Positions 39,619-62,008 of a stretch of DNA of 64,000 nt are shown here, piece after piece. Below the pieces are notes generated by a model. It saw only the letters and a program-made list of their open reading frames with translations. It was not told where the DNA came from and searched no databases. Position 1 is the stretch's first letter, and every line of letters starts with the position of its first letter. The position numbers and the translations under genes are program-made. The stretch is from Asterias rubens (taxonomy: Eukaryota): the NCBI RefSeq assembly GCF_902459465.1, contig NC_047075.1, positions 12,896,001-12,960,000 on the forward strand. The letters are read 5' to 3'.

Positions 39619-42600
39619 CACGGCCGTTCCACCCCCATTAGCACAACGTTATAAACTATCCTGAATTTGTTTGCACTGATTTCATTACTCCAGTGCGCCC
39701 TCTCCCGTGACATCACATAGTCAAGAGAAATCCAAGATGGCGTCCAAAAAAATTGTCGTAGAAAGCCGGAGTAAAATATGAATAAAAAATAGTTTTATGA
39801 AAAAATAGTTCGGTGAAAAGTGTTGTTAATAAAAACCGAGTGTGAATTATTGCCGTTCACAACTTTCTAGGTTATTGACTTGATGAAGGGGCAAGAAAAA
39901 TTGCAGAAATGGGGTCGTTTTCGCCATTTTCTGTGATGAAAATTTGTCGTCGTGTTCTTTCACGACTCTTAAAAATAACAATCGTAAAATATTCATTTTA
40001 ATTCAAATGGAAGTTTTCTGGAACTGTTCTTTTAAGTTTCTTGAAGATAATATTCATCCCAACCAAAATCTTGAATATAAACCAAAGGCCAGCGACAGAT
40101 TTTGTAAAAACGGGGGTTGAATTGGTCCTATTTTTGTCGAATCATACTTGTTTACGTGGTGTTTGTACGGAGCGTATATAATAACGCACTCTGCAGTACA
40201 CACACACAACCCGGGCCCGTGTTGCGCACGCATCCGTGTGGCGCGCTAATCGAAATGTACAAAAATTATGTTAACCCTACAGACGAACCTCGTCGAAGTG
40301 GTTTGTCATTTTATTTGGGGGAATGAAAGTTTACTATTGATGGCTAGATTGAGCATCTAAATATGAAATCAATAAGCAGGCAAGTGAGATGCATGTACGT
40401 TGAAGATGGAGACTTTATTTCAGCAACGTGTTTCATAATACTACAAACTGTACACCATACAACATGAGTTTTTTATTACATCAGCAAGCTTTAAATAAAC
40501 TTTGTAGGGTATGTAGGAGATTAACTACTAAGCATACAAGTTCAACAGCCGAAAAGCATACATACCAGTGCATCAACTATGCTAAAGAACTCGAAACTGT
40601 ATTTTCTATAAATATTTGGAGAGATGATGCCCTTGTTCATCCAAGTACAATTTGTTGGAGATGTGAGCGTTCCCTAAGGCATGAAAGATCTGGCTCTCTA
40701 AGTGGAACAAGGGAGAGTGCTTCTCAAAAGTGGGAAAACACTCGCGTGTACGCTGCAATGTGTGTGAAACATACAAGACGCAACAACGTGGGGGGCGTCC
40801 CCAGAAACGAAAGCGGAATGGCAATGGGCTCAACCAAAAGGAAGCAACAGTTCCTCCCCCGCTTTCTTTTAATTGTTCTCAAGTTTCCAGTGAGCAAATG
40901 CCCCATAATATGGATGTCCTTAGTAACTCAGGAGAGGCAACATTGTTCATCTGTACCATATGCCAGTGTATTCTAGGGAAACCAACAGTTCAAACACCAT
41001 GCGAACACAATTTTTGTGCGGACTGTTTACTTGCTTGGTTTAAGCACAGCAATAGTACGACTGTCCCATGTCCAGTTTGTAATTCATCAGTTGAAATTCA
41101 TAATGTAAATCCCTGTTCAAGAATTCTACGGGTTCAGCTGACAACCCTCCCAACAGTTTGTATAGCTTGTGGAACAATAGGGAAGCTTGAACTAATGAAA
41201 ACCCACATATGCGCACAAGAGCAGCCAAAACCCACAGCATTTACATGTTACGCAAGTGACCCCCTACCCGGCTCGGAACCAACCAATGAATGTGACGTCA
41301 CAACAGCAGCAAGATTACCAAAATCCATGGCATCAAAGCACATCAAGGGCACCCCTATACCCCCCGAGATAGAGGCTGCCACAGATAGGTGGACTGTCCA
41401 CAAGTTGAGGGAAAATCCGTGTGCACGACTGAAAACACCAGGAAGGGTAAATGTTGTTTCTTTTACAAAAGGAAATTAACTAATAATATAAAATTGTGAA
41501 AATACTTATAAAAGGGGGAAAAATTAAAATTTAAGTGTAGAAAAAAAGAAGTGGGAAGATATTCAAGTCGCCATTCAGGTTTCCTATTTTTTTTCTTCAG
41601 CAATTTGGTATTTTTGTTACAAAAGATTGCCAACATTATAAACTCATTGTTATCTTTGTATACATATCTCCCTTTAGCCGGCATATTTTACTCTGGCCAG
41701 CAAGCAAGCAAAATCCACAGACGAGGATGATGCCTGCCCTACATCTCAACCAAGTGAGGAAGCTATGAGCGTAAATCGTTCTCTAGCCATGATGCGAGAG
41801 TGCCAATTTGCATGGGAGCAGTTTCGAAAGCTTCGCAGGTGAGGTTTTATAACTATACTGTTGACAATAAAATTTCCTCTCAACTTAATGCTGCTCATAA
41901 ACAGTAATATTTGAAGTGTAAAGGTTTCTTGTCTATGTTTCTTCAACTGAATCAGGTACCTAGGATCTATGGGAGTGTCTCTTCCATCAGAGCGTGCCAT
42001 GAGACACCAGCAGAATACACTACTCAGTGACAATATTGTCGGGAAATTGGTCCCCCTCCTTTTCAAGTCAAGCAGTGCTGATGGCTCAAATGGGTTGCAG
42101 ACAAGAGAGGTTCCATGTGTGACTGTAAAGGATGTCTCTGCAATGGTCCTTGATTATCTTGACAGGCATGACAGGTGAGAAGTTTTCTTTCGATATTTCC
42201 CTGAATGGAAACGAACAAATGCAAATAGTAGGACACAAAGGCAGAAATTCATGAATAAAAATGGACTGACTCAACTTCTATTAGGTCTAAATAGGAAACT
42301 AGTTTCAGAAATACAAAGTGCAACTTTAGAATATTATTTTAAAAGATTTTAGTCTGCTTCTTTGCATTTAATTGATGGTGCATTTTATTGATAAATTTTA
42401 TTTATAATTATGTCTGAATATTATATTTTCAGAAATGGAGGTTTGACATGGCATGGCTTTATTCCTGTTGACGAGATATGGGTCAAGATTGGTGGGGACT
42501 TTGGTGGTACATCTTTCAAGATGTGTTACCAAATTGTTAATACACCAAGTCCCAACTCAACAAGGAACACCGTTTTTTTTGCCTGCTTTGAGGCCCATGA

Positions 42601-45600
42601 CTCATCAGCAAACATAGAGCGGGTACTACCTCCAATTATGTAGCAGGTGGCTCAACTGGGCAGAATGACATGGAGGTAAAAATATTTTATTTTCAACTAC
42701 AACCAACATTGCTGCATTGCTATTATCATACTGTACCTTGGTATTCAGACCTCCCTGAAGATTGGAACATAGTTTCTTAGGGTTGATACAAGTTGGTTAT
42801 GCACCATATGTACTTCCTGTTCAAAAAAACATATTTAATTAAAATAAGTTAACAGTGTCAACAAATACTTGTTTCTGCACATTAGGGGAAAGTCCATAAA
42901 GCTGTTCGTGTTTGGTGACTATGAGCTACTAACCAAACTGTATGGGATCTGCAGCTGTAATGGTAAGTATTTTTCAATAATACTTGTTATTTATTAAATG
43001 GGTCCCAAATTATGGCTACGCTCACTGCTAAATTCTGTGTTGCAAATCTTCATTCTCTGCTTAGTGTGCATGTGCCAAATTTCTGCCCTAGTTGTGTAAG
43101 CAAAGAATGCCTAGTAATATAGAGTATGCATGCGCAGGACTCTACCCCATGAAATTGTGCTGTGATTACACCGCATAACATATCAAAGTCATAGTGCAAA
43201 TTTCTCCATTTAGGTTTGCCACAGGAATAAATACAAATCTAAATAGTAAGACGTAACTCAAATAACCTTGTTTCTTTTGTATCCAGCCCGCCACTGTTGC
43301 ATTTATTGCACCGCTTCAAAAGAGCAGATGACTGTGCCCTTAACAGACAGGTCCAACTTTCCTGCAAGAACACTTGAGTCCATCGAAGCCAATTACAAAG
43401 CATACATCGCAGACGGTTCCAGAAAATCAAGGGCAAAAGATGTATCCTGTAGTGTCATAGCCATGCCTGTTTTGATGGTCCCTGTAGATCATGTAAGTCT
43501 ATTGGACAGCCTGAAAAGTACAAAAATAATCTACTGTTAACAACTATCATATTATCACAAATGCAATATTATCCGATACTTCTTTGTCTGTATTTATAAG
43601 CCCCCCCCCCCTTTACTTGACAAACTCTCCTGGCTTTATATATATATATATATATATAAATAAAATTCTCCTCATTCAGGTTGTGCTTCCGACCCTCCAC
43701 ATGTCACTTGGCATCTTTAAGAAGCTTTATGACATGCTGGAGGAGAGCTGTCATCGGATAGATGTACAACTCTTTCAACTTTGCGTGTCACACTTTGACT
43801 CAAGCGATCCTGCAGAAAACAATTTTGACCAACTAGCGATGCAACAGTGCAAGACGGAGGAGAAAATGAAGGCGGACAAAGCAAAAAAGGAAGCTGAGCT
43901 GGATCAGATCGAAGAGGAACTTCCTCTCCACCTGCTTCAGAAGGAACATCAGCAAGTTGATGGTGTTTTTCAAGAGCTGGCTTACAGAGCATTTGAACTT
44001 CGCCGTCAAATTCAGGGGCTTGTAAGTGACGTTTCATTATGAATTTTATTTTGGAAATGTCCAAGAAGCAAGGCAACTAAGATTGCAGTTTTGGAATTTT
44101 GATCCATAATAATTTGGTCGCCAAATTCACGAAAGTCAAGGCGCTAAAGGCGCACATTTCCTGCTCATTTACAATGGCTTCAATTACAAACCAGTCAAAG
44201 CCACAGATAGTAATATGGTTTTAATTTTACAGTTACTTTATAGGATGAGTCTCAAATGGAACTACCTGTTGGGTCTGGTCCTGTTGTCGGCTGTTTGGAC
44301 AAAACTCTGAAGGAGCACAAAGTCCAAAGGCAAGCTACCATGGGAAAGCTTTCGTCGGAAACCATGTCCACAAGTGTTGCAAAGTACGTGTATGTTTCTG
44401 GAGTTCCACCTATAAAATTGTAATTCAAATATGTTATGATTATTACACAATATGGAAAACGATAAATCCCTTGGAATAATAGAGATCAGACTTAGAAACA
44501 CATTTATTTTACCTTTACTTCACAGCCTGATGTTATTGCAGCACTAACAACAGCTCCCCGTAAACTCCTTGAAGAACTTAAACTGTGATGCCATACCCGT
44601 CTTCAACCATCAAAAGCTCATAAGGGATGCTGTGAAAGTCGGTGTAACCTTCAGTGAAGTCTTTCTGAAATTTGCAGACGTTCATGTCGGAATTAATCAC
44701 AGCAGGGCAATCACACCTCAAGACCTCCGTAATATTGGTATGCACATTATAATGACAATTTGAATAAATGTTTGAAGCAATTACATGGATAAATAAATTT
44801 GGTTTACTCCTTTTTTTATATTAGTTTCGATTTTTCATTTATTTATTTATTTTCCTGTACTTAATATTTTTTTTCAAGCGCTGTGATTTAGTGGAGTGTT
44901 TTTCAAATGTCGTTTACTATTATCATTATTATTAGTTGTTACTCACTTTTATTTTCAGATGTATGTATCAAACGCTTCATGGCCTGCTATAGATCAAGCT
45001 TCCCAAATGCATCCATAACCCCGAAACTCCATCTTCTTGAGGACCATACACTTGAGCAGTTGCAACGGTTCGGTGCTGGATTTGGACTGCTCAATGAACA
45101 GGGGGGTGAACTTATCCACACCGAATTTAATAGAATTGGGAGAGTAGTTTCTGGAATGAAAGACCCACTCCAACGCCTCGTAACCACCGTGAGGAGGCAT
45201 CACATCAGCACTACACCTGAAGTACAAGACTGCATGCTATCAAGAGCAAAAGAGGAGTAATTCTGCATTGCCTGAAATAAAGCACAAAATTTAATGAAAG
45301 AGCATTAATTTAATTAAAGTGCATTCAATTCCCTGATTTTGGCATGTGCTGTACACACATTTGAATTAAAGTAATTCTACCTTGCAATAAATGTGTTATA
45401 CTGATGTGGCGTGATAATAAACCCTTTCACGCTAACGTCCCATGTTCCGTGATAAATTCAGGTCATTCAAACAAGTATTTTTACATGATTCGCAATGTCT
45501 TGCATGTTTATACGCTATGCGTCAATCCGTCAATAACATGTATGAAGATTATCAAGTTGCACAGTTCAAAATCATTAACGCACCATAGCACTCGGTACAG

Positions 45601-46738
45601 ATTCAACTTGGTGCATACAAAATTACTGTGGAAGAAAGGATCTTTCTTCATGCAGTCATCATATGTACATTAGTGATTTATTTTTTAAAATAACTATAGA
45701 GATGTGGGTAAGATCATCATCTAATTTTGACACGTTTGATTGTGAACTGATGAAGTCAACTCAAACTGAATGATGATGTAAAAGCAAAAGATAAGTCCTT
45801 CCCTTGTTGTCCTTCCAGGCTTCATTCATCACCCTTTAAATGTTTAAGTTTTCATGTTTTTTTTTTTACATGTTTGATTTTTGACTCTTGAGCATGTTGA
45901 GATTTTGAGCAAGTAGGCCTAATATTAATAATATATATATATATATTTCTTTTTTACTGTAATTTTTATTATAATAAAACAATTAAAAAAAAAGCTTTTA
46001 TTTTTAACATTCCATACCTATGCTTATGATGTCAAGTTCAGTGAGTTGACTCGTTGATAATTATTAATGTCTCTACATAATATCCCTTTGGGATTTGGAA
46101 AACCCTAGAGTGACTAGACCCTAGACCTTCGTCTGTTTAATAAACACATGCAAAATACGCTGTGTATGTAACACACGCGTAATGACTATGCATGTGAATC
46201 ATGTACGAAAACACAATACGTGTACATGTGATAGTGACTTAATGCAACGTGTGACATCGACAAAAGCCCTAATTTGACTCAAAAATTACTCGAATTTTAC
46301 GAAATCTACCGCTGGCCTTACCTTCAAACTTCTTCAGTAGGTGGGGGAAAACGTCATTTTGCTGTTACAACGTATCCGGTACCAGGGAAAACTTTTGTTT
46401 CGAAGAAAATCGACGAAGAATAACGGGAATTTTGTCACGTGTCTTTCGAGCCCGCGATTTAACGCTACACGTAAACAGCTTCTAAATCTCACATGAATTA
46501 TTCATATTCTAATATTTACATGTCAACAGGGTACACATGAGATTTAGAGTCACATGACTCAAAGATTTCAGCAAAAATAATTAATTCAACCAATCAAATA
46601 CGGTTATTAGCGTGCCTCATTAATATTCAGTGCACGAGGTCAATAAAGGTCATATTACACCGAGCTTTGTGACGTCGCAAAGCGCTGGCTACTTTTTAAC
46701 AACAGAGGGCGCAATTAAATATTGGTGGAACGGCCGTG
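39619..46738 (+). mobile_element. Chapaev/N-RAG-TP-type (RAG1-like) DNA transposon 1, complete ends
   Basis: Perfect 15-bp TIR CACGGCCGTTCCACC (39619-39633 / 46724-46738). 4-bp TSD TTCA (39615-39618, 46739-46742). Confidence 0.92.
40464..45260 (+). pseudogene. RAG1-like (Chapa/CND + RING + Zn finger + DDE core) transposase, 10 exons, disrupted
   Basis: HQQALNKLCRVC..HPSTICWRC; RING CTICQCILGKP..CEHNFCADC..CPVC; IWVKIGGDFGG, FGDYE, CCIYC, LHMSLG, PKLHLLEDH, EQGGE. Frameshifts at ~40735-40738 and ~44335; in-frame TAG at 42641-42643. Confidence 0.88.
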
Positions 46739-52019: not shown

Positions 52020-53604
52020 AAACTTTAATGGTATCAAAAGTTGGCATCATAATGGTCAATGGTTTTGTTTTGCATCAAGTATACATTTACCAATGGTACC
52101 ATTATACATCATATAGTGCATCTTTACTATGATGTGTACCAATTGTTTTCGCGTAACTTTCAGAAGCACCATTAAAACACCATTCATGATCTTGTTCCCA
52201 GTGATGTACCATTTACTGTCATAACTTGTATACATTATACAAATGGTATGACGAATAATGATACCAAAGAAAAACAGATGTGCCATTTATTTTCATGTTG
52301 CCATTAACAGCACTATTAAAACACCATTGTATACAATTCATGGCCATTCAATACCATCGTTAGACCAAAATATGTACCATTCATTTTAACATTCCATTAA
52401 CAGTCCCATTGACATGCCACTGTATACCATTCATATTGTTTAATACCTAATTATTTAAAAATATGTACCAATCATTTCCACACTACCGTTGACACACCAT
52501 AGGTAACCATTCATATGACCATTCTTTATCATTCGATATCATTCAAAACCATTGTTAAGCAAAGAGATTTTACATTCTTTTTCACATTACCATTGACACA
52601 CCACTGGACACCGTTCATAACCATTCTTTATCATTTGATATCATTTAACACCATTGTTAAGCAAAGAGATTTTACATTCTTTTTCACATTACCATTGACA
52701 CACCACTGGACACCGTTCATAACCATTCTTTATCATTGGACATCGTTCAACACCATTGTTAAGCAAAGAGATTTTACATTCATTTTCACATTACCATTGA
52801 CACACCACTGGACACCATTCATAACTAATCTTTATCATTGGACATCGTTCAACACCATTGATAAGCAAAGAGATCTATCATTCATTTTCACATTACCATT
52901 GACACACCACTGGACACCATTCATAACTAATCTTTATCATTGGACATCGTTCAACACCATTGATAAGCAAAGAGATCTATCATTCATTTTCACATTACCA
53001 TTGACACACCACTGGACACCATTCATAACTAATCTTTATCATTGGACATCGTTCAACACCATTGATAAGCAAATAGATCTATCATTCATTTTCACATTAC
53101 CATTGACACACCACTGGTCACCATTCATAACTAATCTTTATCATTGGACATCGTTCCACACCATTGATAAGCAAAGAGATCTATCATTCATTTTCACATT
53201 ACCATTGACACACCACTGGACACCATTCATAACTAATCTTTATCATTGGACATCGTTCAACACCATTGATAAGCAAAGAGATCTATCATTCATTTTCACA
53301 TTACCATTGACACACCACTGGACACCATTCATAACTAATCTTTATCATTGGACATCGTACAACACCATTGATAAGCAAAGAGATCTATCATTCATTTTCA
53401 CATTACCATTAACAGCACCATTGACACACCACTCATACCATTCATAACAAGTCAATACCATTGTTAAATGAAAAGATGTACCATTCAGTTTAACATTACC
53501 ATTAGAAGCACCATTAATACACCATAGGACACCATTCAATACCATTCAGTACCATTAGATACCATTAGATACCAATCATTACCATTGGTTTATTTTTGTA
53601 AGGG
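52020..53604 (+). mobile_element. Subterminal ACCATT-motif field and CCC-type right terminus of an EnSpm-like element (probably CACTA element 2)
   Basis: Dozens of ACCATT/AATGG motifs ending at TTTTTGTAAGGG (53593-53604; reverse complement CCCTTACAAAAA). Confidence 0.6.
52510..53420. repeat. 102-bp tandem array, about 9 copies
   Basis: Period 102 bp (e.g. TTTATCATTGG at 52831 and 52933). It produces the 34-aa periodic ORF 52515-53447. Confidence 0.95.
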
Positions 53605-54770: not shown

Positions 54771-55006
54771 TCACTAGTCTTATTTCCAGTCGCAGCCTTT
54801 GAACTATACGACTGAGCAATTATTAACCATTTTACGAACCCCATTTGTATCTATCTCTTCCTCCATGGTTACCAACAACAAAAAACAGTTCATGAACAAA
54901 AATAAAAGGGCCTACGTTGAATTAACTTTTTATAAATCTATCTAAGCAGCAAGTTCAGCCCACGTCCCGGGGCCGAGCGGCTGCCGTCCAGCGGGCCATC
55001 ATCCCC

Positions 55007-58000
55007 CACCGCTGTTCAGAACGCACCAACGAAAGACATTTGGTTTTACGCATGCGCGGCTTTCAATGGAAGGTCAACTTGAAATGAATTATTCATAAGT
55101 TGTGACCTACCGCTGTATTTGTACGTTTCAGAACGGAACAAAGGGTAAAAAAAGGTACTGAATATTCATATTTGGAGATAATTTTGACCAATAAACAACT
55201 CTTTAAACCTTACTCTTGTAATAATAATGACTCACCCCCTTGTTATCCGACCCCTGACCGCGGGAAAGCCCTCATTTTGTTGACAGATGTCGTCTGCCTG
55301 CGCAACGTAAATCCGACTTTATACGGTGAGTTTGGGGGGCGTTTATGAACGAAATTGAATTCATTTGATAAAAGAAACATATTTTTTGTAGAGAAAAAAC
55401 ACATTTCTGTTAAATTATTATATTTTCATGACTGCAAACCCCCTGGATTGATCAAAATCAGCGGGATTTCCCTGACGTTTTGTTGACTTCTGCGGCTGTT
55501 CCGCGGTGCACATAGTGCGTGTTACATGTACATTTACACATTGTACACGATAGTTCGCAGTGTTTTGTGCATGCACACCACAAGAACGGTCGCTGATGAT
55601 CGGATATTGTATCCAATTGCTCATTTTGTTAGTGGGCTTGGTCAAAACAAAAGTCCCCCAATATGCAATTTTGAATACATTCTTTTGAATTTTCAATATA
55701 TTATTAAAAAATAAAACGATGATAAAACTATTCTATTTTTTTAGGTTAATTTAAGAAGGATTCTATGTTTTATTCAAAATACAATGTTTACAATTTGTTT
55801 ACTTCTTAATCTCTTGTCTTAATAATGGAACGGTGTTACTTAGCTTGATTAATTAAGTGATAAACAATTCACAATTATGATTTCCACAACACTTACCCCC
55901 ATACTCTAACATCAGTATTTATCAAATATAATTATTTTTTTAATTTAACTTCTTTGATAAACAACAAACCATTTTTTTTATTGGAAATTATATTAATATT
56001 ATTTTACTTTGATTAATTGATTTTAACACCTGTACATTTTCTTATGTACACAACAAATCCCCAAAAGGAAATTAAAACAACTAACAATATAACTGCTTTC
56101 AAATTTTACATTTTATAGGTATAGAATAATATGAGTGCCCAGCATGAACATACAAGAAATCTAGAGAAATTATGCAGAGTGTGTGGCAATGCTATCCGAA
56201 AATGGAAAAACAAAAGCAAAAAAAATAAAAGATGCAGTGCTTACTCAGAAAAGATACAAGTAAAATATGGAATTAATATCCAAGCTGATGAACATCATCG
56301 CCATCCCTCACAAATCTGTCACCTTTGCTACTCAAATTTGTTCCTTCCAAAACCCCATCACCCCCCCAATGAGTGGCCTCCCCATCCTGAAAGAGGAACT
56401 TGCACTGTGTGTGCTAAAGTTGATGAAGTGAAAACTGGACGGCCTGCAGCCAAGTATGCCAGACTGGAACGACTCGATACAGATGAGGCAACAGCCAAAG
56501 AAGTAGTTTCTCAGCACTTCAACACTTTGGCTGAGACAACCACAATATTTGTTCGTGACAACTTCACAACAGATGAGTCATCGATATGTTGTCAAATTTG
56601 CAGCCAAATATTGAACAGACCGGTTGAAACACAGTGCCATCACATTTTCTGTTTGGACTGCTTACAAGTAGTGTTTAACCGGTCATCATCGTCATCAGTA
56701 CTTTGTCCAAGCTGTCACAAACATACAAGTCTGAAGGACACCAGCCCTGTCCGAGAATATTTTTTAAATATTCTCGGAAATGCAAAAGTCACCTGCAGAA
56801 CCTGCAACCGAAGCAGTTGGCTAAATAGTACATCTAGCCATGATTGTAAGGACCCTCTGACATCACAACATATAGATGAACACATATTCAGAGACCTCAT
56901 CAAGAGAAATATGTCTGCGTCTGGAAAGTTGGGTCAGCAGGTGACATCAACTTTGTTGAAACAACAAATACAAAGTGATGGAGGAACAGTTAGGCTTTCT
57001 ACAGGTGGAAAGGTAAGTTTGCATTAGTTAAAATGATGAATGCCTAATTCATTACAAGACTAAAAACGGATGTTTTTTAAAAATAAATGTTTAGTTTTAT
57101 GTCTGCATTTTAAAAAAAAGTATTCTGAAAGATATCTTTTTACTTTCATTCCAATTACAGGCAATGTATGTTCAACGCATAACTCATCCGAGAAAGTCGA
57201 GCGATGACGTTTCAAAACGAACACTCTTTCGGCGAACAAAACTTGTGAAAGATAAACTCCAAGAAGTCAGTGGGAACAAGGCTACGGAACAACTAAGCCA
57301 CATGCTCAGAACAGCTACAAGGCACGATCTTCAGCATCTGTTAAAGAAGATCAAATTCACCACATATATTCCACCTCTAGAGGAACTGGCTCTAAAATCT
57401 GACATAAGTCTGTCATGGGCTGCCCTTCGTGAACTCAAGCTGTAAGATTTATAAGATCATCTTTTTCTTCTCAACTTTTAAGAAAGTTTCACTGTGGTAA
57501 TATATGAATATCAACACATAAAAACTAAAACAAATAAGTTACATTTATGTGATAATCTTTAAATTGTTCTTTTGTTCCCAGGTGGTTGAGACAGTACAAT
57601 ATTATTATGGCCAACGAACAGACAACCCGAAAAGTCAGCCAAATGTCTGTTGGACAAGACATCTTGGAGGGAGAGAGACTGCCCTTTGTTGCGAATGATC
57701 ACGGAAGCCTTGTCAGCAAGCCCGCTCCCTGTGTCTTCATTACAGACTTGAAGAAATACGTCTTGGGTCTGTTGGATGATTATGAAAGGTAACTTTATGG
57801 ATTGAACGTACTTTCAACTGCAGGAAATTGTAATCACACACTTGTTGTAGCTGAAAACATAGATACGCAAGTACCCCAATAACTATAAAATAACACTTTG
57901 TTTCTTATTACTTTTTAGATGTGGAAAGTTGCAATGGACGGAAGGGATGCCAAAAGAGGAGATCTGGTTGAAGCTAGGAGGGGATAAGGGGGGCGGGAGT

Positions 58001-61000
58001 TTCAAGATGATGCTAGAAGTCGCCAACATAGCCAACCCTAACTCACGCCGTGACACAAGTGTCATTTGTGTCTACGAATCATCGGACACTGCCCCAAATC
58101 TTCATATCGCACTTGAAAAGTACAAAGAACAAGTGGAGTCAATATCTAATACATCATGGAGGTACGCTTTGATAAATTCAAATACCTTTTTTAAAAGAAA
58201 AACAAAATAAACTAATCATGATTTATGGCACTTACATTTTTTCATTTTTTCATCTTAGGGGAAAGAAGCTCGTTGTGTTCCTCTTTGGAGATTACGAGTT
58301 TTTATGCAGGATGTACGGTTTATCAGGACCAAGTGGTAAGTAAAATCCAACACTCTGCATTGCAGAACACAAATAGAAAAATTAAAACAGTTATAAACAG
58401 TATAATTGTGTAAGGTCATCAGTAACTTCATTGCAATCTGCTCTCTTCAGGTCGTCACCCCTGCTTGTGGTGTTGTATCACTAGTAAAGATATGGCTCTC
58501 CCAAAGGCCAGTAGACCACCTAGCGATGAACGTACTCTACAGAAGATCTCCAATGACTACAAACGATTCACAGACGCTGGCAGCCTACTCAAGAATGCCA
58601 AGAACTGCAACAATGTCATCGGCAAGGTGTTCTTCGACATACCAACCACTTTTGTGAGTAAAATTGAATATTTAAACCAACAAAAAACAAAGGGGTTTGT
58701 TATTTTTGTTCTATTTTATATTTAATAAATTGATATGCTAATAGTTTATTTATTTTATTATTATGTTGTTCCTTTTGCTATAGGTCTGTCCACCATCACT
58801 GCACATAAGCCTTGGTGTATGGTTCAAGCTATTCACTCTCTTCGAAGAAGAATGCAACGGACTGTTGGAAAATATTGTTGAGGCACTGGCAGAGAGTCCC
58901 CAGACAGTACCCTCCTTAGCCAATGGACCATTCCCATTGTACGTGGCCAAGCGCTGTGAGGTTGTTACAGCAAAGAACAGGGCTCAAGAAATAGCAACTG
59001 AGATTGATGAGCTAAGAGAACAAATGGCAGTGGTAATGTTGATCGGTGAAGATGTTGATGTAAATGAGGTGATGACCGACACAACAGATCAAATCAAGAC
59101 ACTGCAAGAGGAATTGGATAGACAGGTAATTTAATTTTACTAACCTCAGCTCTGCATAAGTATTCAAACACAGGCAGTTCCGCAAATCATCACTGTTCTT
59201 CACTGACATCTTTGTCATGATAAAGCATCTCAACCGACATTTACCTGGGTAATGGAAAGATTGAATCATTATTTTCATATTTATGTTCATTTGCAGGAAG
59301 CAATAGCAGCTGCCAACATCAAACAACTACCCTCCGAGCAAAACCCACTACTAATCAAACTGGAAGAGACACTTCAAGAAATCAAAGTCAGGCGGCAAGC
59401 TTATTATTCAAACACATTCATTGGCAATCATGTGCACAAATGCCTAAAGGTATTGTAAAGCCTGTTCATTTGTTGATATTAAAAATATAGTTCCTTTAAA
59501 GAACGTAGACATTAATAGCTTGTAAATATGTTGTTGTTTTTATTGCTATGATGTTGTCTTTTGTATGATCTTTTATTAGGAGGTGAACATCCACAAACTA
59601 ACATCGGTGATCACTGATGAAACCTCTCGGATTTGTCCAGCTAAAATGAATGAAGCAAAATGCGTTGCAAACAAGTTTGCATCAATCTTCCATCTATTTT
59701 CACAATGTCACAACGTGTACAATGCGAGCAGATATCTCAGTGAAACAGAAATTACAAAGCTTGGTAAGTGTGAAATTAATACGTGTGACATTGCTTTTGA
59801 ATTTCTTTTCCAATAATTTCAGAATTATTTTGCATTACATGTTTATCAATATAGACATGCTCTATTCTTAATGTTTGATTTATTTTACTTGCCTTATAAA
59901 TGCAGATGAAAATGTTCGTGACTTTCTGCATTTCTTCCGCTGTAACTTCCCTTCAAAGTCAATCCCACCCAAAATGCACATGATGGAAGATCACATCATA
60001 CCATTCATCAGACGTACTAAACACGGCATGGGTCTGCTGTGTGAACAAGGAGGAGAATCCATGCACGCTGTATTCAACATCTTGGAGAGACGGTTTGGTG
60101 GCACACGCAACACGAAGAAGAAGGACCCCGATCTTCACAAGCTGCAGTGCATCATGCGGGAACACCTCCTCAACGTCAACCCGTCCATAGCAAATCTCTG
60201 TCCACAAAGAAAGCCACGGAAACTTGCCAAATCATCTGCTAGCAGAAATTAATCCCGATCCCAATATAATTATATATTCAATATTGGCGATTTCAAGTAG
60301 TACTCCAAATACATCAACCAAGTTATTCACTTTAATTTATGATGTTACTTCCAGTATCTCATGAAAGTTTGTTATTTTACTGACAAAAGTTGAACGAAAA
60401 AATTGAAAAACTAAAGTTGTTTGCGTACCTGTGACTTGGCCACACCACCACCATGGATGGAGGAATTGAAGGAAACGTACCCACACTTGAGTTTCAGATA
60501 TTGATAAAAATCATGGCACCCCCAAAAACCAAGCCAAGCCAGAAATTGTCACATCGTTAGTTATTTATGTTTGACAGTTTTACGGTTTTATTTCTCAGTT
60601 GCCTTATCTCAAAAAAGTCTTACGTATCCTCTATATGTGATATGGAATAATCGAGTGCATTATTCATCATGGTAGACCCATACAACTACAGTATCTACTC
60701 AATTACAAATTAACCACCTGTATTGTTTTGCCATGTGAAGCGCCCTCCTTGTCATGACGTGTGCTAAAAATGGGTATTCACAAAATAAACAGAAGAGTGT
60801 TTTGAAAGCGTTTGCACTTTTAATTATTGTATTAATATATTATTAAATACATAATACTTACGTGTGAAGTCCATTTTTCCCGGAGGAAATTCACGTTACT
60901 TAGATTTTGACGATTCAAATTGGCTAAAAAAACCATCCCGTCACAGCCCCAGCTGATACAAATCCACACACACACCGCCCACGGTTTACCATTCCATCCA

Positions 61001-61254
61001 CACGGCCGCATAAAAAAACATGGCCACTTGTATATTTATTTAAGAACTATGACCTCTTTATCATAAATATTCATAGCTTTGGTTCGAAAGTTTAATTAGT
61101 CCACTAGATTTGCTGTTTTGAATAGGGGCGTCTCTCCGAACCCTTTTCGGTTACAACCGTTGTTTTGTTTAAGATTTTGACACAAGAGGGCGCTCTTCAA
61201 GCAGCAGAAATCCACGCATGCGCAAAACAATTTGTCAGTCGGAAATCAGCGGTG
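55007..61254 (+). mobile_element. Chapaev/N-RAG-TP-type (RAG1-like) DNA transposon 2, complete and apparently intact
   Basis: Termini CACCGCTG (55007-55014) / CAGCGGTG (61247-61254). 4-bp TSD CCCC (55003-55006, 61255-61258). A second inverted block matches at 24/30 bp internally. Confidence 0.9.
56131..60252 (+). CDS. Intact 10-exon RAG1-like transposase, 972 aa (Chapa/CND Zn domain, C3HC4 RING, Zn finger, Transib/RAG1-like DDE core)
   Basis: Exons 56131-57012, 57161-57441, 57582-57788, 57919-58161, 58259-58335, 58451-58653, 58784-59125, 59297-59449, 59580-59763 and 59906-60252 total 2919 nt, with compatible phases and no stops. Motifs LCRVCG, CQICSQILNRP..CHHIFCLDC..CPSC, LGGDKGGG, FGDYEF, PCLWC, LHISLG, KMHMMEDH, EQGGES. 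Confidence 0.9.
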
Positions 61255-62008
61255 CCCCCACGGCCAGACCTCCCCAGACGCACTGAACTCCCCGTTCTTG
61301 CTCGTACGATGTAGGATTTTAGCGGGGCCAGTCTAGTAATGCGAATACTTTGTACACGAAAGAATGTCTAGTACCCGTTTTACTAATACTAATAGTGCAT
61401 GTGATTCTGTAGTCGTGTGTCTCTTTTTGCCTCGGGCCTTTGCAGCAAAAAGACGAGATTATTTAATACCAACTAGCGAGTGGAGTTGAAACAAAACTAC
61501 AGCTAGAGAATTCATCCTCTCATAAAACATCTGCTCAGACATGTCGGAGAGGCGTTTACCGTGTTTACCGCGTAAGTATAGTATGCAATTGCGAGTCACA
61601 TATACCCCACAGTTCGTTTTTAGATACAAAATTACAGGGACTTTACTTCTCTGTCCTTTCTCTATGCTGTTTGCATGTACATGTTGAGTCACAGGGCAAC
61701 AGGACAGTGGTGTCTAACTTATACTAGTCCATCGCCATAGGATAGATGTCACTTGTCTTATTTGCCAACATGATCCTTTCTTCGGGGTATACATTCATTG
61801 TTTTATGTCTATTATGGGGATGTAATTCCTTGACCTTGGTCTTGGACGGTACTATTTGAGGTAGCTCCTGTTTACATTGCTCAGAATCATTTGACAGCAA
61901 AATTTACTGTGCGATGCATCTGAACAGGGAGCACATACTGCAAATGGTAGTCGGCAAGGAAAGCTAAAATAAAGTAATACTCTTGTCCACAAAAATGAAG
62001 CTTCCATA

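What the first reader, a model, noticed from the sequence alone, without database searches (positions are those of the whole stretch)
55007..61254. Apparently intact, potentially active RAG1-like (Chapaev/N-RAG-TP-type) transposon
Seen: perfect termini, a 4-bp TSD and a 10-exon ORF that splices to 972 codons with no lesion. Its domain order mirrors RAG1: N-terminal Zn (CRxCG..HP..CxxC..W..H..CxxC), C3HC4 RING, Zn finger, then D (GGDKG), D (FGDYE), CxxC, HxxxxH and E (EQGGES), aligning by eye with RAG1 D600/D708/E962 and its Zn site. No room or ORF exists for a RAG2-like partner. Known: Chapaev has 4-bp TSDs and RAG1-like N-termini, whereas Transib and RAG make 5-bp TSDs. An intact copy is a usable reagent for studying how RAG1 gained its non-core region.
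Basis: partly seen in the sequence, partly recalled or inferred. Interest (0 to 1): 0.8.

Follow-up and report, generated by a model that had tools for sequence, protein, structure and literature searches.

The report
Intact, transcribed Chapaev transposon in starfish
This is a complete, expressed and very young copy of a Chapaev-type jumping gene in the common starfish. Its enzyme matches the antibody-gene recombinase RAG1 along its whole length, but the family is already known, so it is a useful reagent rather than a surprise.

Summary
Window 55007-61254 is a 6,248-bp DNA transposon with CAC...GTG ends: an 8-bp perfect inverted terminus plus a shared subterminal block. It has a 4-bp target-site duplication and one 10-exon gene of 972 codons. 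A 4,044-nt RNA contig uses all nine predicted junctions. The spliced product is 972/972 identical to the Asterias rubens RefSeq protein XP_033638522.1 ("uncharacterized").

A second full copy on another chromosome is 99.78% identical, intact, and flanked by an unambiguous GCAC duplication. Metagenome contigs hold 99.9% copies.

Exon 1 matches mouse RAG1 residues 101-391 (NZD/Chapa, RING, zinc finger) in one stretch, profile E 2e-36. The predicted core of a 32%-identical relative superimposes on RAG1 458-1008 (Z 22-26), BbRAGL and HzTransib, and on nothing else comparably.

By sequence the core is Pfam DUF1280, not the RAG1 core family. It carries the Chapaev motifs C(2)C, LH and H(4)H. There is no second gene.

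Verdict: an autonomous Chapaev transposon of the Chapa+RING subgroup, recently mobile, and a new member of a known kind. Present activity is inferred, not shown. This scan already noted Chapaev elements elsewhere in this genome, probably including this family.

The parts
55003..55006 (.). left copy of the 4-bp target-site duplication (CCCC)
   Evidence: An uninterrupted copy of the flanking repeat in the reads has 5 C against 4+5 here. The second copy has a clean GCAC/GCAC duplication.
55007..55014 (+). left terminal inverted repeat, CACCGCTG
   Evidence: Copies with other flanks start exactly here.
55044..55059 (+). left subterminal block TTTTACGCATGCGCGG, 29 nt inside the terminal 8-mer
   Evidence: The core CGCATGCG occurs only twice in the element, once at each end.
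56131..57012 (+). exon 1 (codons 1-294): Chapa/NZD-like zinc domain, C3HC4 RING, zinc finger, linker
   Evidence: Pfam RING and weak RAG1_imp_bd. phmmer hit to RAG1 141-372, E 2.8e-10. Family profile hit to RAG1 101-391, E 2e-36, and to NZD 21wb, E 3e-16. AF2 model with pLDDT 89.
57161..57441 (+). exon 2
   Evidence: Junctions 57012|57161 and 57441|57582 are used in the RNA contig.
57582..57788 (+). exon 3
   Evidence: junctions.
57919..58161 (+). exon 4: first catalytic Asp (D479, GGDKG)
   Evidence: Pfam DUF1280, E 7.5e-15. D479 is invariant in the family.
58259..58335 (+). exon 5: second catalytic Asp (D549, FGDYE)
58451..58653 (+). exon 6: C(2)C zinc ligands C568 and C571
   Evidence: In the family profile this motif aligns with the BbRAG1L CxxC motif.
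58784..59125 (+). exon 7: LH motif (L637 H638) and start of the helical insertion
59297..59449 (+). exon 8
59580..59763 (+). exon 9
59906..60252 (+). exon 10: H(4)H (H882, H887), catalytic Glu (EQGGES, E904/E908) and the stop codon
   Evidence: In the family profile this region aligns with the BbRAG1L H..H..E region.
61212..61227 (-). right subterminal block (TTTTGCGCATGCGTGG on the minus strand), 19 nt inside the terminal 8-mer
61247..61254 (-). right terminal inverted repeat (CAGCGGTG on the plus strand)
   Evidence: Alignments to L002 and L003 end exactly here.
61255..61258 (.). right copy of the target-site duplication (CCCC)

Best explanation
This is an autonomous cut-and-paste DNA transposon of the Chapaev group, in the subgroup whose transposase carries a Chapa zinc domain followed by a RING finger. 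It lies in the Asterias rubens genome (LR699105.1).

Its single 10-exon gene is transcribed and spliced into a 972-aa protein. The N-terminal 294 residues are collinear with the RAG1 non-core region (NZD, RING, zinc finger). The remaining ~680 residues form a RAG1/Transib-type core: DDBD-like, pre-RNase H, an RNase H fold with D479, D549 and E908, a zinc site built from C568/C571 and H882/H887, and a C-terminal domain.

Inferred mechanism, by analogy with RAG1 and HzTransib. Transposase subunits bind the two bipartite ends (terminal CACCGCTG plus the TTTTRCGCATGCG block). They cleave next to the CAC and release the element. They then insert its 3'-OH ends into target DNA with a 4-bp stagger, which gives the 4-bp duplication. 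No RAG2-like partner is needed.

Shown: the anatomy, splicing, protein identity, N-terminal homology, core fold at family level, the 4-bp duplication at two loci, and several near-identical intact copies at different sites. Inferred: catalysis, a hairpin intermediate, any E3-ligase activity of the RING, and present-day mobility.
For: Ends, TSD and boundaries: (second copy GCAC|...|GCAC).

Gene model. All nine junctions occur in a 4,044-nt RNA contig. The product is identical to RefSeq XP_033638522.1. It aligns end to end with 951-990-aa relatives, E down to 3.6e-157.

Chapaev motifs: C(2)C, LH, H(4)H and the DDE residues are invariant in the family. The hallmarks are as listed in PMC4079192. 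A Chapa domain followed by a RING in Chapaev subgroups is described in PMC4411706.

Core sequence family: DUF1280, E 2.5e-21, with no hit to the RAG1 core family.

N-terminus: RAG1 101-391, E 2e-36; NZD structure 21wb, E 3e-16; 1rmd, E 7e-17.

Core fold (model of P0028:290-951, pLDDT 84): all 49 Foldseek PDB hits with E<=1e-3 are RAG1, BbRAGL or HzTransib. VIA-align gives Z 22-26 over about 450 residues of RAG1 458-1008, and the next fold is the P element at Z 10.8.

Youth and mobility: the L002 copy is 99.78% identical with an intact ORF. It has 5 coding differences, of which 4 are synonymous (binomial P about 0.013). L003 and L004 are 99.89% and 99.95% identical and intact. Five different left flanks were seen.
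Against: No transposition event or polymorphic insertion was shown directly. The 'empty site' contigs come from a high-copy flanking repeat, so they are probably paralogous rather than allelic.

The terminal perfect inverted repeat is only 8 bp.

The metagenome contig L003 has flanks ACAC and GTGG, which are not a duplication. This may reflect a chimeric short-read assembly or a rearranged copy.

Placement among Repbase Chapaev families was not possible.
Confidence: 0.88

Rival explanations
1. It is intact and expressed but no longer mobile. The host may silence it, or the ends or protein may carry subtle defects, so the copies are leftovers of one recent burst.
For: No direct evidence of current movement. 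Only two annotated loci in the reference assembly. RNA depth is modest, with possible antisense spliced joints (CT..AC) in run X12. The copy in organism B has a 2-nt deletion in exon 7.
Against: Three full-length copies are intact. Their differences are mostly synonymous or non-coding. Copies are 99.8-99.95% alike. At least five different left flanks occur across samples.
Confidence: 0.3
2. It is a RAG-like or Transib-superfamily element in the narrow sense, a relative of ProtoRAG or TransibSU, rather than a Chapaev.
For: The core fold matches RAG1, BbRAGL and HzTransib over about 550 residues. The best, sub-threshold, PDB sequence hit of the core profile is BbRAG1L, E 0.22, collinear at the CxxC and H..H..E motifs. 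The N-terminus is homologous to RAG1. PMC4411706 itself places Chapaev as a clade of a wide Transib superfamily.
Against: The TSD is 4 bp, not 5 bp, at two loci. No Pfam RAG1 core hit appears even at E 10, while DUF1280 scores 2.5e-21. There is no RAG2-like ORF. The terminus is CACCGCTG, not a CACAGTG-like heptamer with an A-rich nonamer.
Confidence: 0.05
3. It is a domesticated host gene that merely sits between chance inverted repeats.
For: RefSeq annotates it as an ordinary protein-coding gene. It is spliced and expressed. An earlier follow-up in this scan (s1-150112) read another Chapaev-type gene in this genome as possibly kept by the host.
Against: The same 6,248-bp unit, with the same two ends, recurs at another chromosome with its own 4-bp duplication. 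It also recurs in contigs with other flanks. Introns and non-coding parts are as conserved as exons, which points to youth rather than selection on a host gene.
Confidence: 0.02

Closest known systems
Chapaev transposons with Chapa domain plus RING finger (Kapitonov & Jurka 2007; Kapitonov & Koonin 2015, PMC4411706; hallmarks in PMC4079192)
   Same: CAC...GTG termini and a 4-bp TSD. A DDE core with C(2)C, LH and H(4)H. An N-terminal Chapa zinc domain followed by a RING. A single transposase gene. An animal host.
   Different: This is a separate family. The nearest other proteins found are at most 38% identical, from Patiria, Holothuria, Strongylocentrotus, Diadema, Antedon and the sponge Ephydatia; the congener Asterias amurensis gives only 29%. 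No comparison with the Repbase consensus sequences was possible. The copies here are unusually young, intact and expressed.
RAG1 / RAG1-like (vertebrate RAG1, amphioxus BbRAG1L of ProtoRAG)
   Same: Collinear along the whole protein. NZD, RING and zinc finger match by sequence. DDBD through CTD matches by fold at family level. The spacings are nearly the same: second Asp to CxxC is 19 residues in both, the two His are 5 apart in both, and the last His to Glu is 21 against 20 (RAG1 numbering D708, C727, C730, H937, H942 and E962 is from the literature). The catalytic Glu motif ExGGES resembles RAG1 SEGNES, which is quoted from memory.
   Different: No significant core sequence similarity (best E 0.22). 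A 4-bp rather than 5-bp TSD. No RAG2-like partner. The ends are not a heptamer/nonamer RSS. The first and second Asp are 70 residues apart, against 108 in RAG1.
Transib (HzTransib)
   Same: The same core fold (Z 21.9). A single-protein transposase with no RAG2. Ends begin with CAC.
   Different: Transib has no Chapa/NZD or RING (bioRxiv 10.64898/2026.01.24.700457) and makes 5-bp TSDs.
N-RAG-TP of Aplysia californica (Panchin & Moroz 2008, as cited in PMC8355894)
   Same: A mobile element carrying a RAG1 N-terminal-like sequence.
   Different: PMC8355894 describes N-RAG-TP as composed entirely of the N-terminal-like sequence. Here that region is fused to a complete RAG1-fold core. No N-RAG-TP sequence was available for a direct test.
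Pfam DUF1280 (PF06918), defined on Caenorhabditis proteins
   Same: Residues 315-532 match at E 2.5e-21, as do all relatives.
   Different: DUF1280 covers only the part up to the first Asp region and carries no functional annotation.

Membership tests
Chapaev | Termini 5'-CAC ... GTG-3' (PMC4079192) | tested here: met
   CACCGCTG ... CAGCGGTG. The same boundaries occur in L002 and L003.
Chapaev | 3- to 4-bp target-site duplication | tested here: met
   CCCC at the window locus. GCAC at the second genomic copy. The L003 flanks do not match, but that contig may be chimeric.
Chapaev | DDE triad with the motifs C(2)C, LH and H(4)H | tested here: met
   D479, D549, C568-x2-C571, L637 H638, H882-x4-H887 and E904/E908. 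All are invariant or nearly so in 11 aligned proteins.
Chapaev | N-terminal Chapa (NZD-like) zinc domain, followed by a RING in some subgroups (PMC4411706) | tested here: met
   The exon-1 family profile matches the RAG1 NZD structure 21wb at E 3e-16, and RAG1 101-391 in one stretch at E 2e-36. Pfam finds the RING.
Chapaev | Core groups with Repbase Chapaev transposases in a phylogeny | not testable with these tools
   No Repbase sequences were available. The indirect support is the DUF1280 match, together with Caenorhabditis elegans being among the species abbreviations in the legend of the Transib-superfamily tree in PMC4411706.
RAG1 / RAGL / Transib (narrow sense) | 5-bp target-site duplication | tested here: not met
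   4 bp at both genomic loci.
RAG1 / RAGL / Transib (narrow sense) | Significant sequence match to the RAG1 core | tested here: not met
   No Pfam RAG1 core hit at E up to 10. The core profile against PDB gives BbRAG1L at E 0.22 as its best hit.
RAG1 / RAGL / Transib (narrow sense) | RAG1-type core fold (DDBD, pre-RNase H, RNase H, ZnC2/ZnH2, CTD) | tested here: met
   Tested on a relative's model, not on this protein. Z is 22-26 to RAG1 458-1008, 22.0 to BbRAGL and 21.9 to HzTransib.
RAGL transposons (ProtoRAG type) | Adjacent RAG2-like gene inside the element | tested here: not met
   No other ORF of 105 aa or more on either strand. Only about 1.1 kb and 1.0 kb of non-coding sequence flank the gene.

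The most novel reading that the evidence does not exclude
The two ends carry the same two recognition blocks, but the spacer is 29 bp at the left end and 19 bp at the right end, a difference of one helical turn. Earlier notes of this scan report a similar offset in other Chapaev families of this genome. If this RAG1-architecture transposase needs one end of each kind for synapsis, then a 12/23-like pairing rule exists in Chapaev. It would then be older than the RAG/Transib lineage.
Probability: 0.1. Interest if true: 0.8.

Novelty: new member of a known kind. Interest (0 to 1): 0.42.

Why it matters
Chapaev transposases are the only known mobile-element proteins that share the RAG1 N-terminal zinc domain and RING. 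The 2026 NZD preprint states that no experimental test of a Chapa domain or a Chapaev system exists.

This starfish family offers three things such work needs. It has a defined element with exact ends and a known target duplication. It has a verified cDNA structure. It has several intact natural copies. This makes it a practical starting point for biochemical tests of four questions:
- Does a Chapaev enzyme cut via hairpins, as RAG does?
- What do the NZD and RING contribute?
- Does the unequal end spacing matter?
- Was the RAG1 non-core region fused to the core before Chapaev and RAG/Transib split?

It does not overturn current views.

Tried and rejected
- Exon pieces gave nothing by themselves. 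Exon 10 had no PDB hit at E 10, and most exon pieces had no Pfam hit.
- The spliced protein could not be referenced until listing of cluster members returned P0159.
- A pattern search for a further copy of the ends found none in the window. blastn of the element against the window found no other copy.
- A run search with a 60-nt stretch across the left junction sampled only 2 words. It is uninformative about insertion polymorphism.
- Foldseek and VIA on the exon-1 model cannot tell the RAG1 RING-zinc-finger unit from TRAF6 or LNX by structure (Z 9.4 against 9.1-9.2). Only sequence identity (32-34% against 20-24%) and the profile search favour RAG1.
- The AlphaFold DB cluster search returned mostly unnamed proteins and added little.
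- Rfam found nothing in the window.
- The tail of contigs L006 and L007 beyond 57262 is not an internal deletion of the element.
- The second Chapaev-like locus in the window was checked for the same end asymmetry. Its inverted repeats do not start with CAC, and its second block is offset by about 7 bp, so it gives no support.
Full report
**What is in the sequence**

The stretch 55007-61254 begins CACCGCTG and ends CAGCGGTG. Only these 8 bp form a perfect inverted repeat. A second shared block, TTTTRCGCATGCG with a palindromic core CGCATGCG, occurs once at each end in inverted orientation. It starts at position 38 from the left tip and position 28 from the right tip, so the spacers are 29 and 19 nt.

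The flanks are CCCC on the left and CCCCC on the right. A 4-bp duplication is therefore visible, but it is ambiguous inside a C-run.

On the plus strand, ten exons joined at GT..AG sites give one open frame of 972 codons. Their coordinates are 56131-57012, 57161-57441, 57582-57788, 57919-58161, 58259-58335, 58451-58653, 58784-59125, 59297-59449, 59580-59763 and 59906-60252. Nothing else of 105 aa or more is open on either strand of the element, so there is no room for a RAG2-like gene.

**Is the gene model real?**

Public runs hold the sequence. When contigs of four runs were laid on 54950-60940, one 4,044-nt contig of RNA run X1 (depth 10, against 3-4 over the introns) joined all ten exons. 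It used exactly the nine predicted junctions.

The exon-1 ORF is in the protein collection. Its 90% cluster contains XP_033638522.1, 'uncharacterized protein LOC117299171 [Asterias rubens]', 972 aa. That protein is identical to my spliced model at 972 of 972 positions.

The locus encoding it (L001, LR699105.1 of GCA_902459465.3) matches the window at 100% over 9,870 nt. The window is therefore that locus of the Asterias rubens assembly.

The model also aligns end to end (6-960 against 3-950) with 951-990-aa proteins of other echinoderms, E down to 3.6e-157.

**Is it a transposon, and how old?**

A second protein of the same cluster (LOC117301380) led to locus L002 on another chromosome, LR699108.1. 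The alignment to the window runs from 55006 to 61254 at 99.78%, with 14 substitutions and no gaps. It stops at the termini.

That copy is flanked by GCAC on both sides, an unambiguous 4-bp duplication. Its ten exons are also open. Five of the 14 differences are in exons. Four of these are synonymous and one is Q671K. Under neutrality, one or fewer non-synonymous changes out of five has P of about 0.013. This is weak but suggests selection on the transposase.

The L002 copy sits inside an intron of an AAA-ATPase gene.

Metagenome assemblies hold further copies. L003 is full length, 99.89% identical and intact. L004 covers 5,859 nt at 99.95%. The flanks of L003 (ACAC and GTGG) are not a duplication. 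A short-read assembly that joins the flanks of two copies would explain this, but I could not show it.

Contigs of runs X11 and X12 enter the element at exactly 55007 from two more flanks (...TATGGCCT and ...CTCCCAGT). Other contigs run from the left flank straight into the right flank, through CCCCC. That flank has a word depth of about 2,700 in X11, so it is a high-copy repeat. The uninterrupted form is probably a paralogue, not an allele. It still shows that the filled site has four extra C.

In all there are five different left flanks and three intact full-length copies 99.8-99.95% alike. This is a young, low-copy family. Mobility today is inferred, not observed.

**The N-terminus**

Exon 1 alone finds full-length mouse RAG1 (residues 141-372) as the best solved structure, E 2.8e-10. 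Next comes the RAG1 RING/zinc-finger dimerisation domain 1rmd.

An exhaustive search with exon 1 found 712 clusters at E<=1e-3 and 82 at E<=1e-10. Most are ~300-aa first-exon ORFs.

A profile of 44 of them, with the window's exon first, matches mouse RAG1 101-391 in one stretch at E 2e-36. It matches the NMR structure of the RAG1 N-terminal zinc domain (21wb) at E 3e-16, and 1rmd at E 7e-17.

The AF2 model of exon 1 is confident (pLDDT 89). By structure alone, its RING plus zinc finger matches 1rmd no better than TRAF6 or LNX (Z 9.4 against 9.1-9.2). The sequence identity is higher, at 32-34% against 20-24%. The homology of the N-terminus to the RAG1 non-core region therefore rests on sequence, and it is strong.

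**The core**

By sequence the core belongs to Pfam DUF1280 (residues 315-532, E 2.5e-21). The RAG1 core family is not hit even at E 10.

A ten-member core profile finds amphioxus RAG1L as its best PDB match, but only at E 0.22. The aligned pieces are the CxxC motif after the second Asp and the H..H..E region.

The AF2 model of a relative's core (P0028:290-951, 32% identical to this protein, pLDDT 84) gives a clear answer on the fold. All 49 Foldseek hits with E<=1e-3 are RAG1, BbRAGL or HzTransib, and the next hit has E 0.056. VIA-align gives Z 22-26 with about 450 residues aligned to RAG1 458-1008 at 3.5-4.2 Å rmsd. It gives Z 22.0 for BbRAGL and 21.9 for HzTransib. The next fold, the P element transposase, reaches 10.8.

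In the family alignment this window's protein keeps every invariant residue: D479, D549, C568/C571, L637 H638, H882/H887 and E904/E908. The spacings resemble those of RAG1. The second Asp to CxxC is 19 residues in both. The two His are 5 apart in both. The last His to the Glu is 21 here and 20 in RAG1 (RAG1 numbering from the literature).

The caveat is that the fold was predicted for a relative, not for this exact protein.

**Classification**

Published Chapaev hallmarks are a 3-4-bp TSD, CAC/GTG termini, and a DDE core with C(2)C, LH and H(4)H (PMC4079192). A Chapa zinc domain, followed by a RING in two subgroups, is described in PMC4411706. All of these are met.

The RAG/Transib hallmarks that could be tested are not met: the 5-bp TSD, a sequence match to the RAG1 core, and a RAG2-like partner for RAGL elements. 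Only the fold is shared. PMC4411706 already places Chapaev as a distant clade of a wide Transib superfamily. A 2026 preprint (10.64898/2026.01.24.700457) describes the Chapa domain as NZD-like.

The element is thus a new family of a known kind. The nearest other proteins found are at most 38% identical and are all annotated as uncharacterized. They come from Patiria, Holothuria, Strongylocentrotus, Diadema, Antedon and the sponge Ephydatia. The best hit in Asterias amurensis is 29%.

**How it most likely works**

By analogy with RAG1 and HzTransib, the protein would bind the bipartite ends and cut next to CAC with the D479/D549/E908 site. It would then join the 3' ends to a target with a 4-bp stagger, without a RAG2-like cofactor. 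The RING may act as an E3 ligase, as in RAG1. All of this is inference. The decisive tests are listed under next steps.

**Earlier notes of this scan**

The scan had already flagged several Chapaev-type genes and elements in this genome. One is a 6,256-nt element with unequal bipartite ends on another piece (s1-150105). From its size and description it may be a copy of this same family. A note on this window's own left end (s1-150171) gives different spacer lengths, but I confirm the 10-bp difference between the two ends. Whether that offset has any function is open.

Noticed in passing
window 40085-46319 (gene pieces about 40460-45230, + strand): A second, distantly related Chapaev-type gene. 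tblastn pieces are 25-59% identical to family members and cover the Chapa/RING region, the first Asp block and the H..H..E block. It is bracketed by 25-nt inverted repeats at 40085-40109 and 46295-46319, which start AAGGCC rather than CAC. Intactness and true ends were not determined.
   Followed up: partly
L002:4877-11124 (LR699108.1, Asterias rubens): The second full-length copy lies inside an intron of an AAA-ATPase (proteasome-type) gene, on the same strand as that gene. RefSeq annotates only a 565-aa product there, although all ten exons are open.
   Followed up: partly
window 54950-55006 and 61255-61290: The element sits in a sequence that is very high-copy in the reads (word depth about 2,700 in run X11). 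Contigs of that repeat without the element read ...CATCATCCCCCGCGGCCAGACC, one base different from the window's flanks.
   Followed up: partly
window 57768-58236, 58354-59145: Run X12 has joints with CT..AC ends, which are GT..AG on the minus strand. These may be spliced antisense transcripts across the transposase gene. Support is thin, with about 30 nt on the shorter side of each joint.
   Followed up: no
window 55007-60940, as seen in run X2 (coded organism B): A copy about 98% identical, with its introns, occurs in metatranscriptome runs of another coded organism. It has a 2-nt deletion at 58891 in exon 7 and a 26-nt insertion after 60351. Either a sister species holds a decaying copy, or the element crossed species. 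The organism name is hidden.
   Followed up: no
L006 and L007 (metagenome contigs), at window position 57262: Two samples share a contig in which the element (55626-57262, 100% identical) breaks off inside exon 2 into unrelated AT-rich sequence. This is not an internal deletion of the element. It may be a rearranged or interrupted copy.
   Followed up: partly
window 55130: The assembly reads A here. All four runs laid and all other copies (L002, L003, L004) read C. This is either a private variant of this copy or an assembly error.
   Followed up: no
window 52472-53437: A tandem array of a 102-bp unit, 9.4 copies, 95% matches.
   Followed up: no
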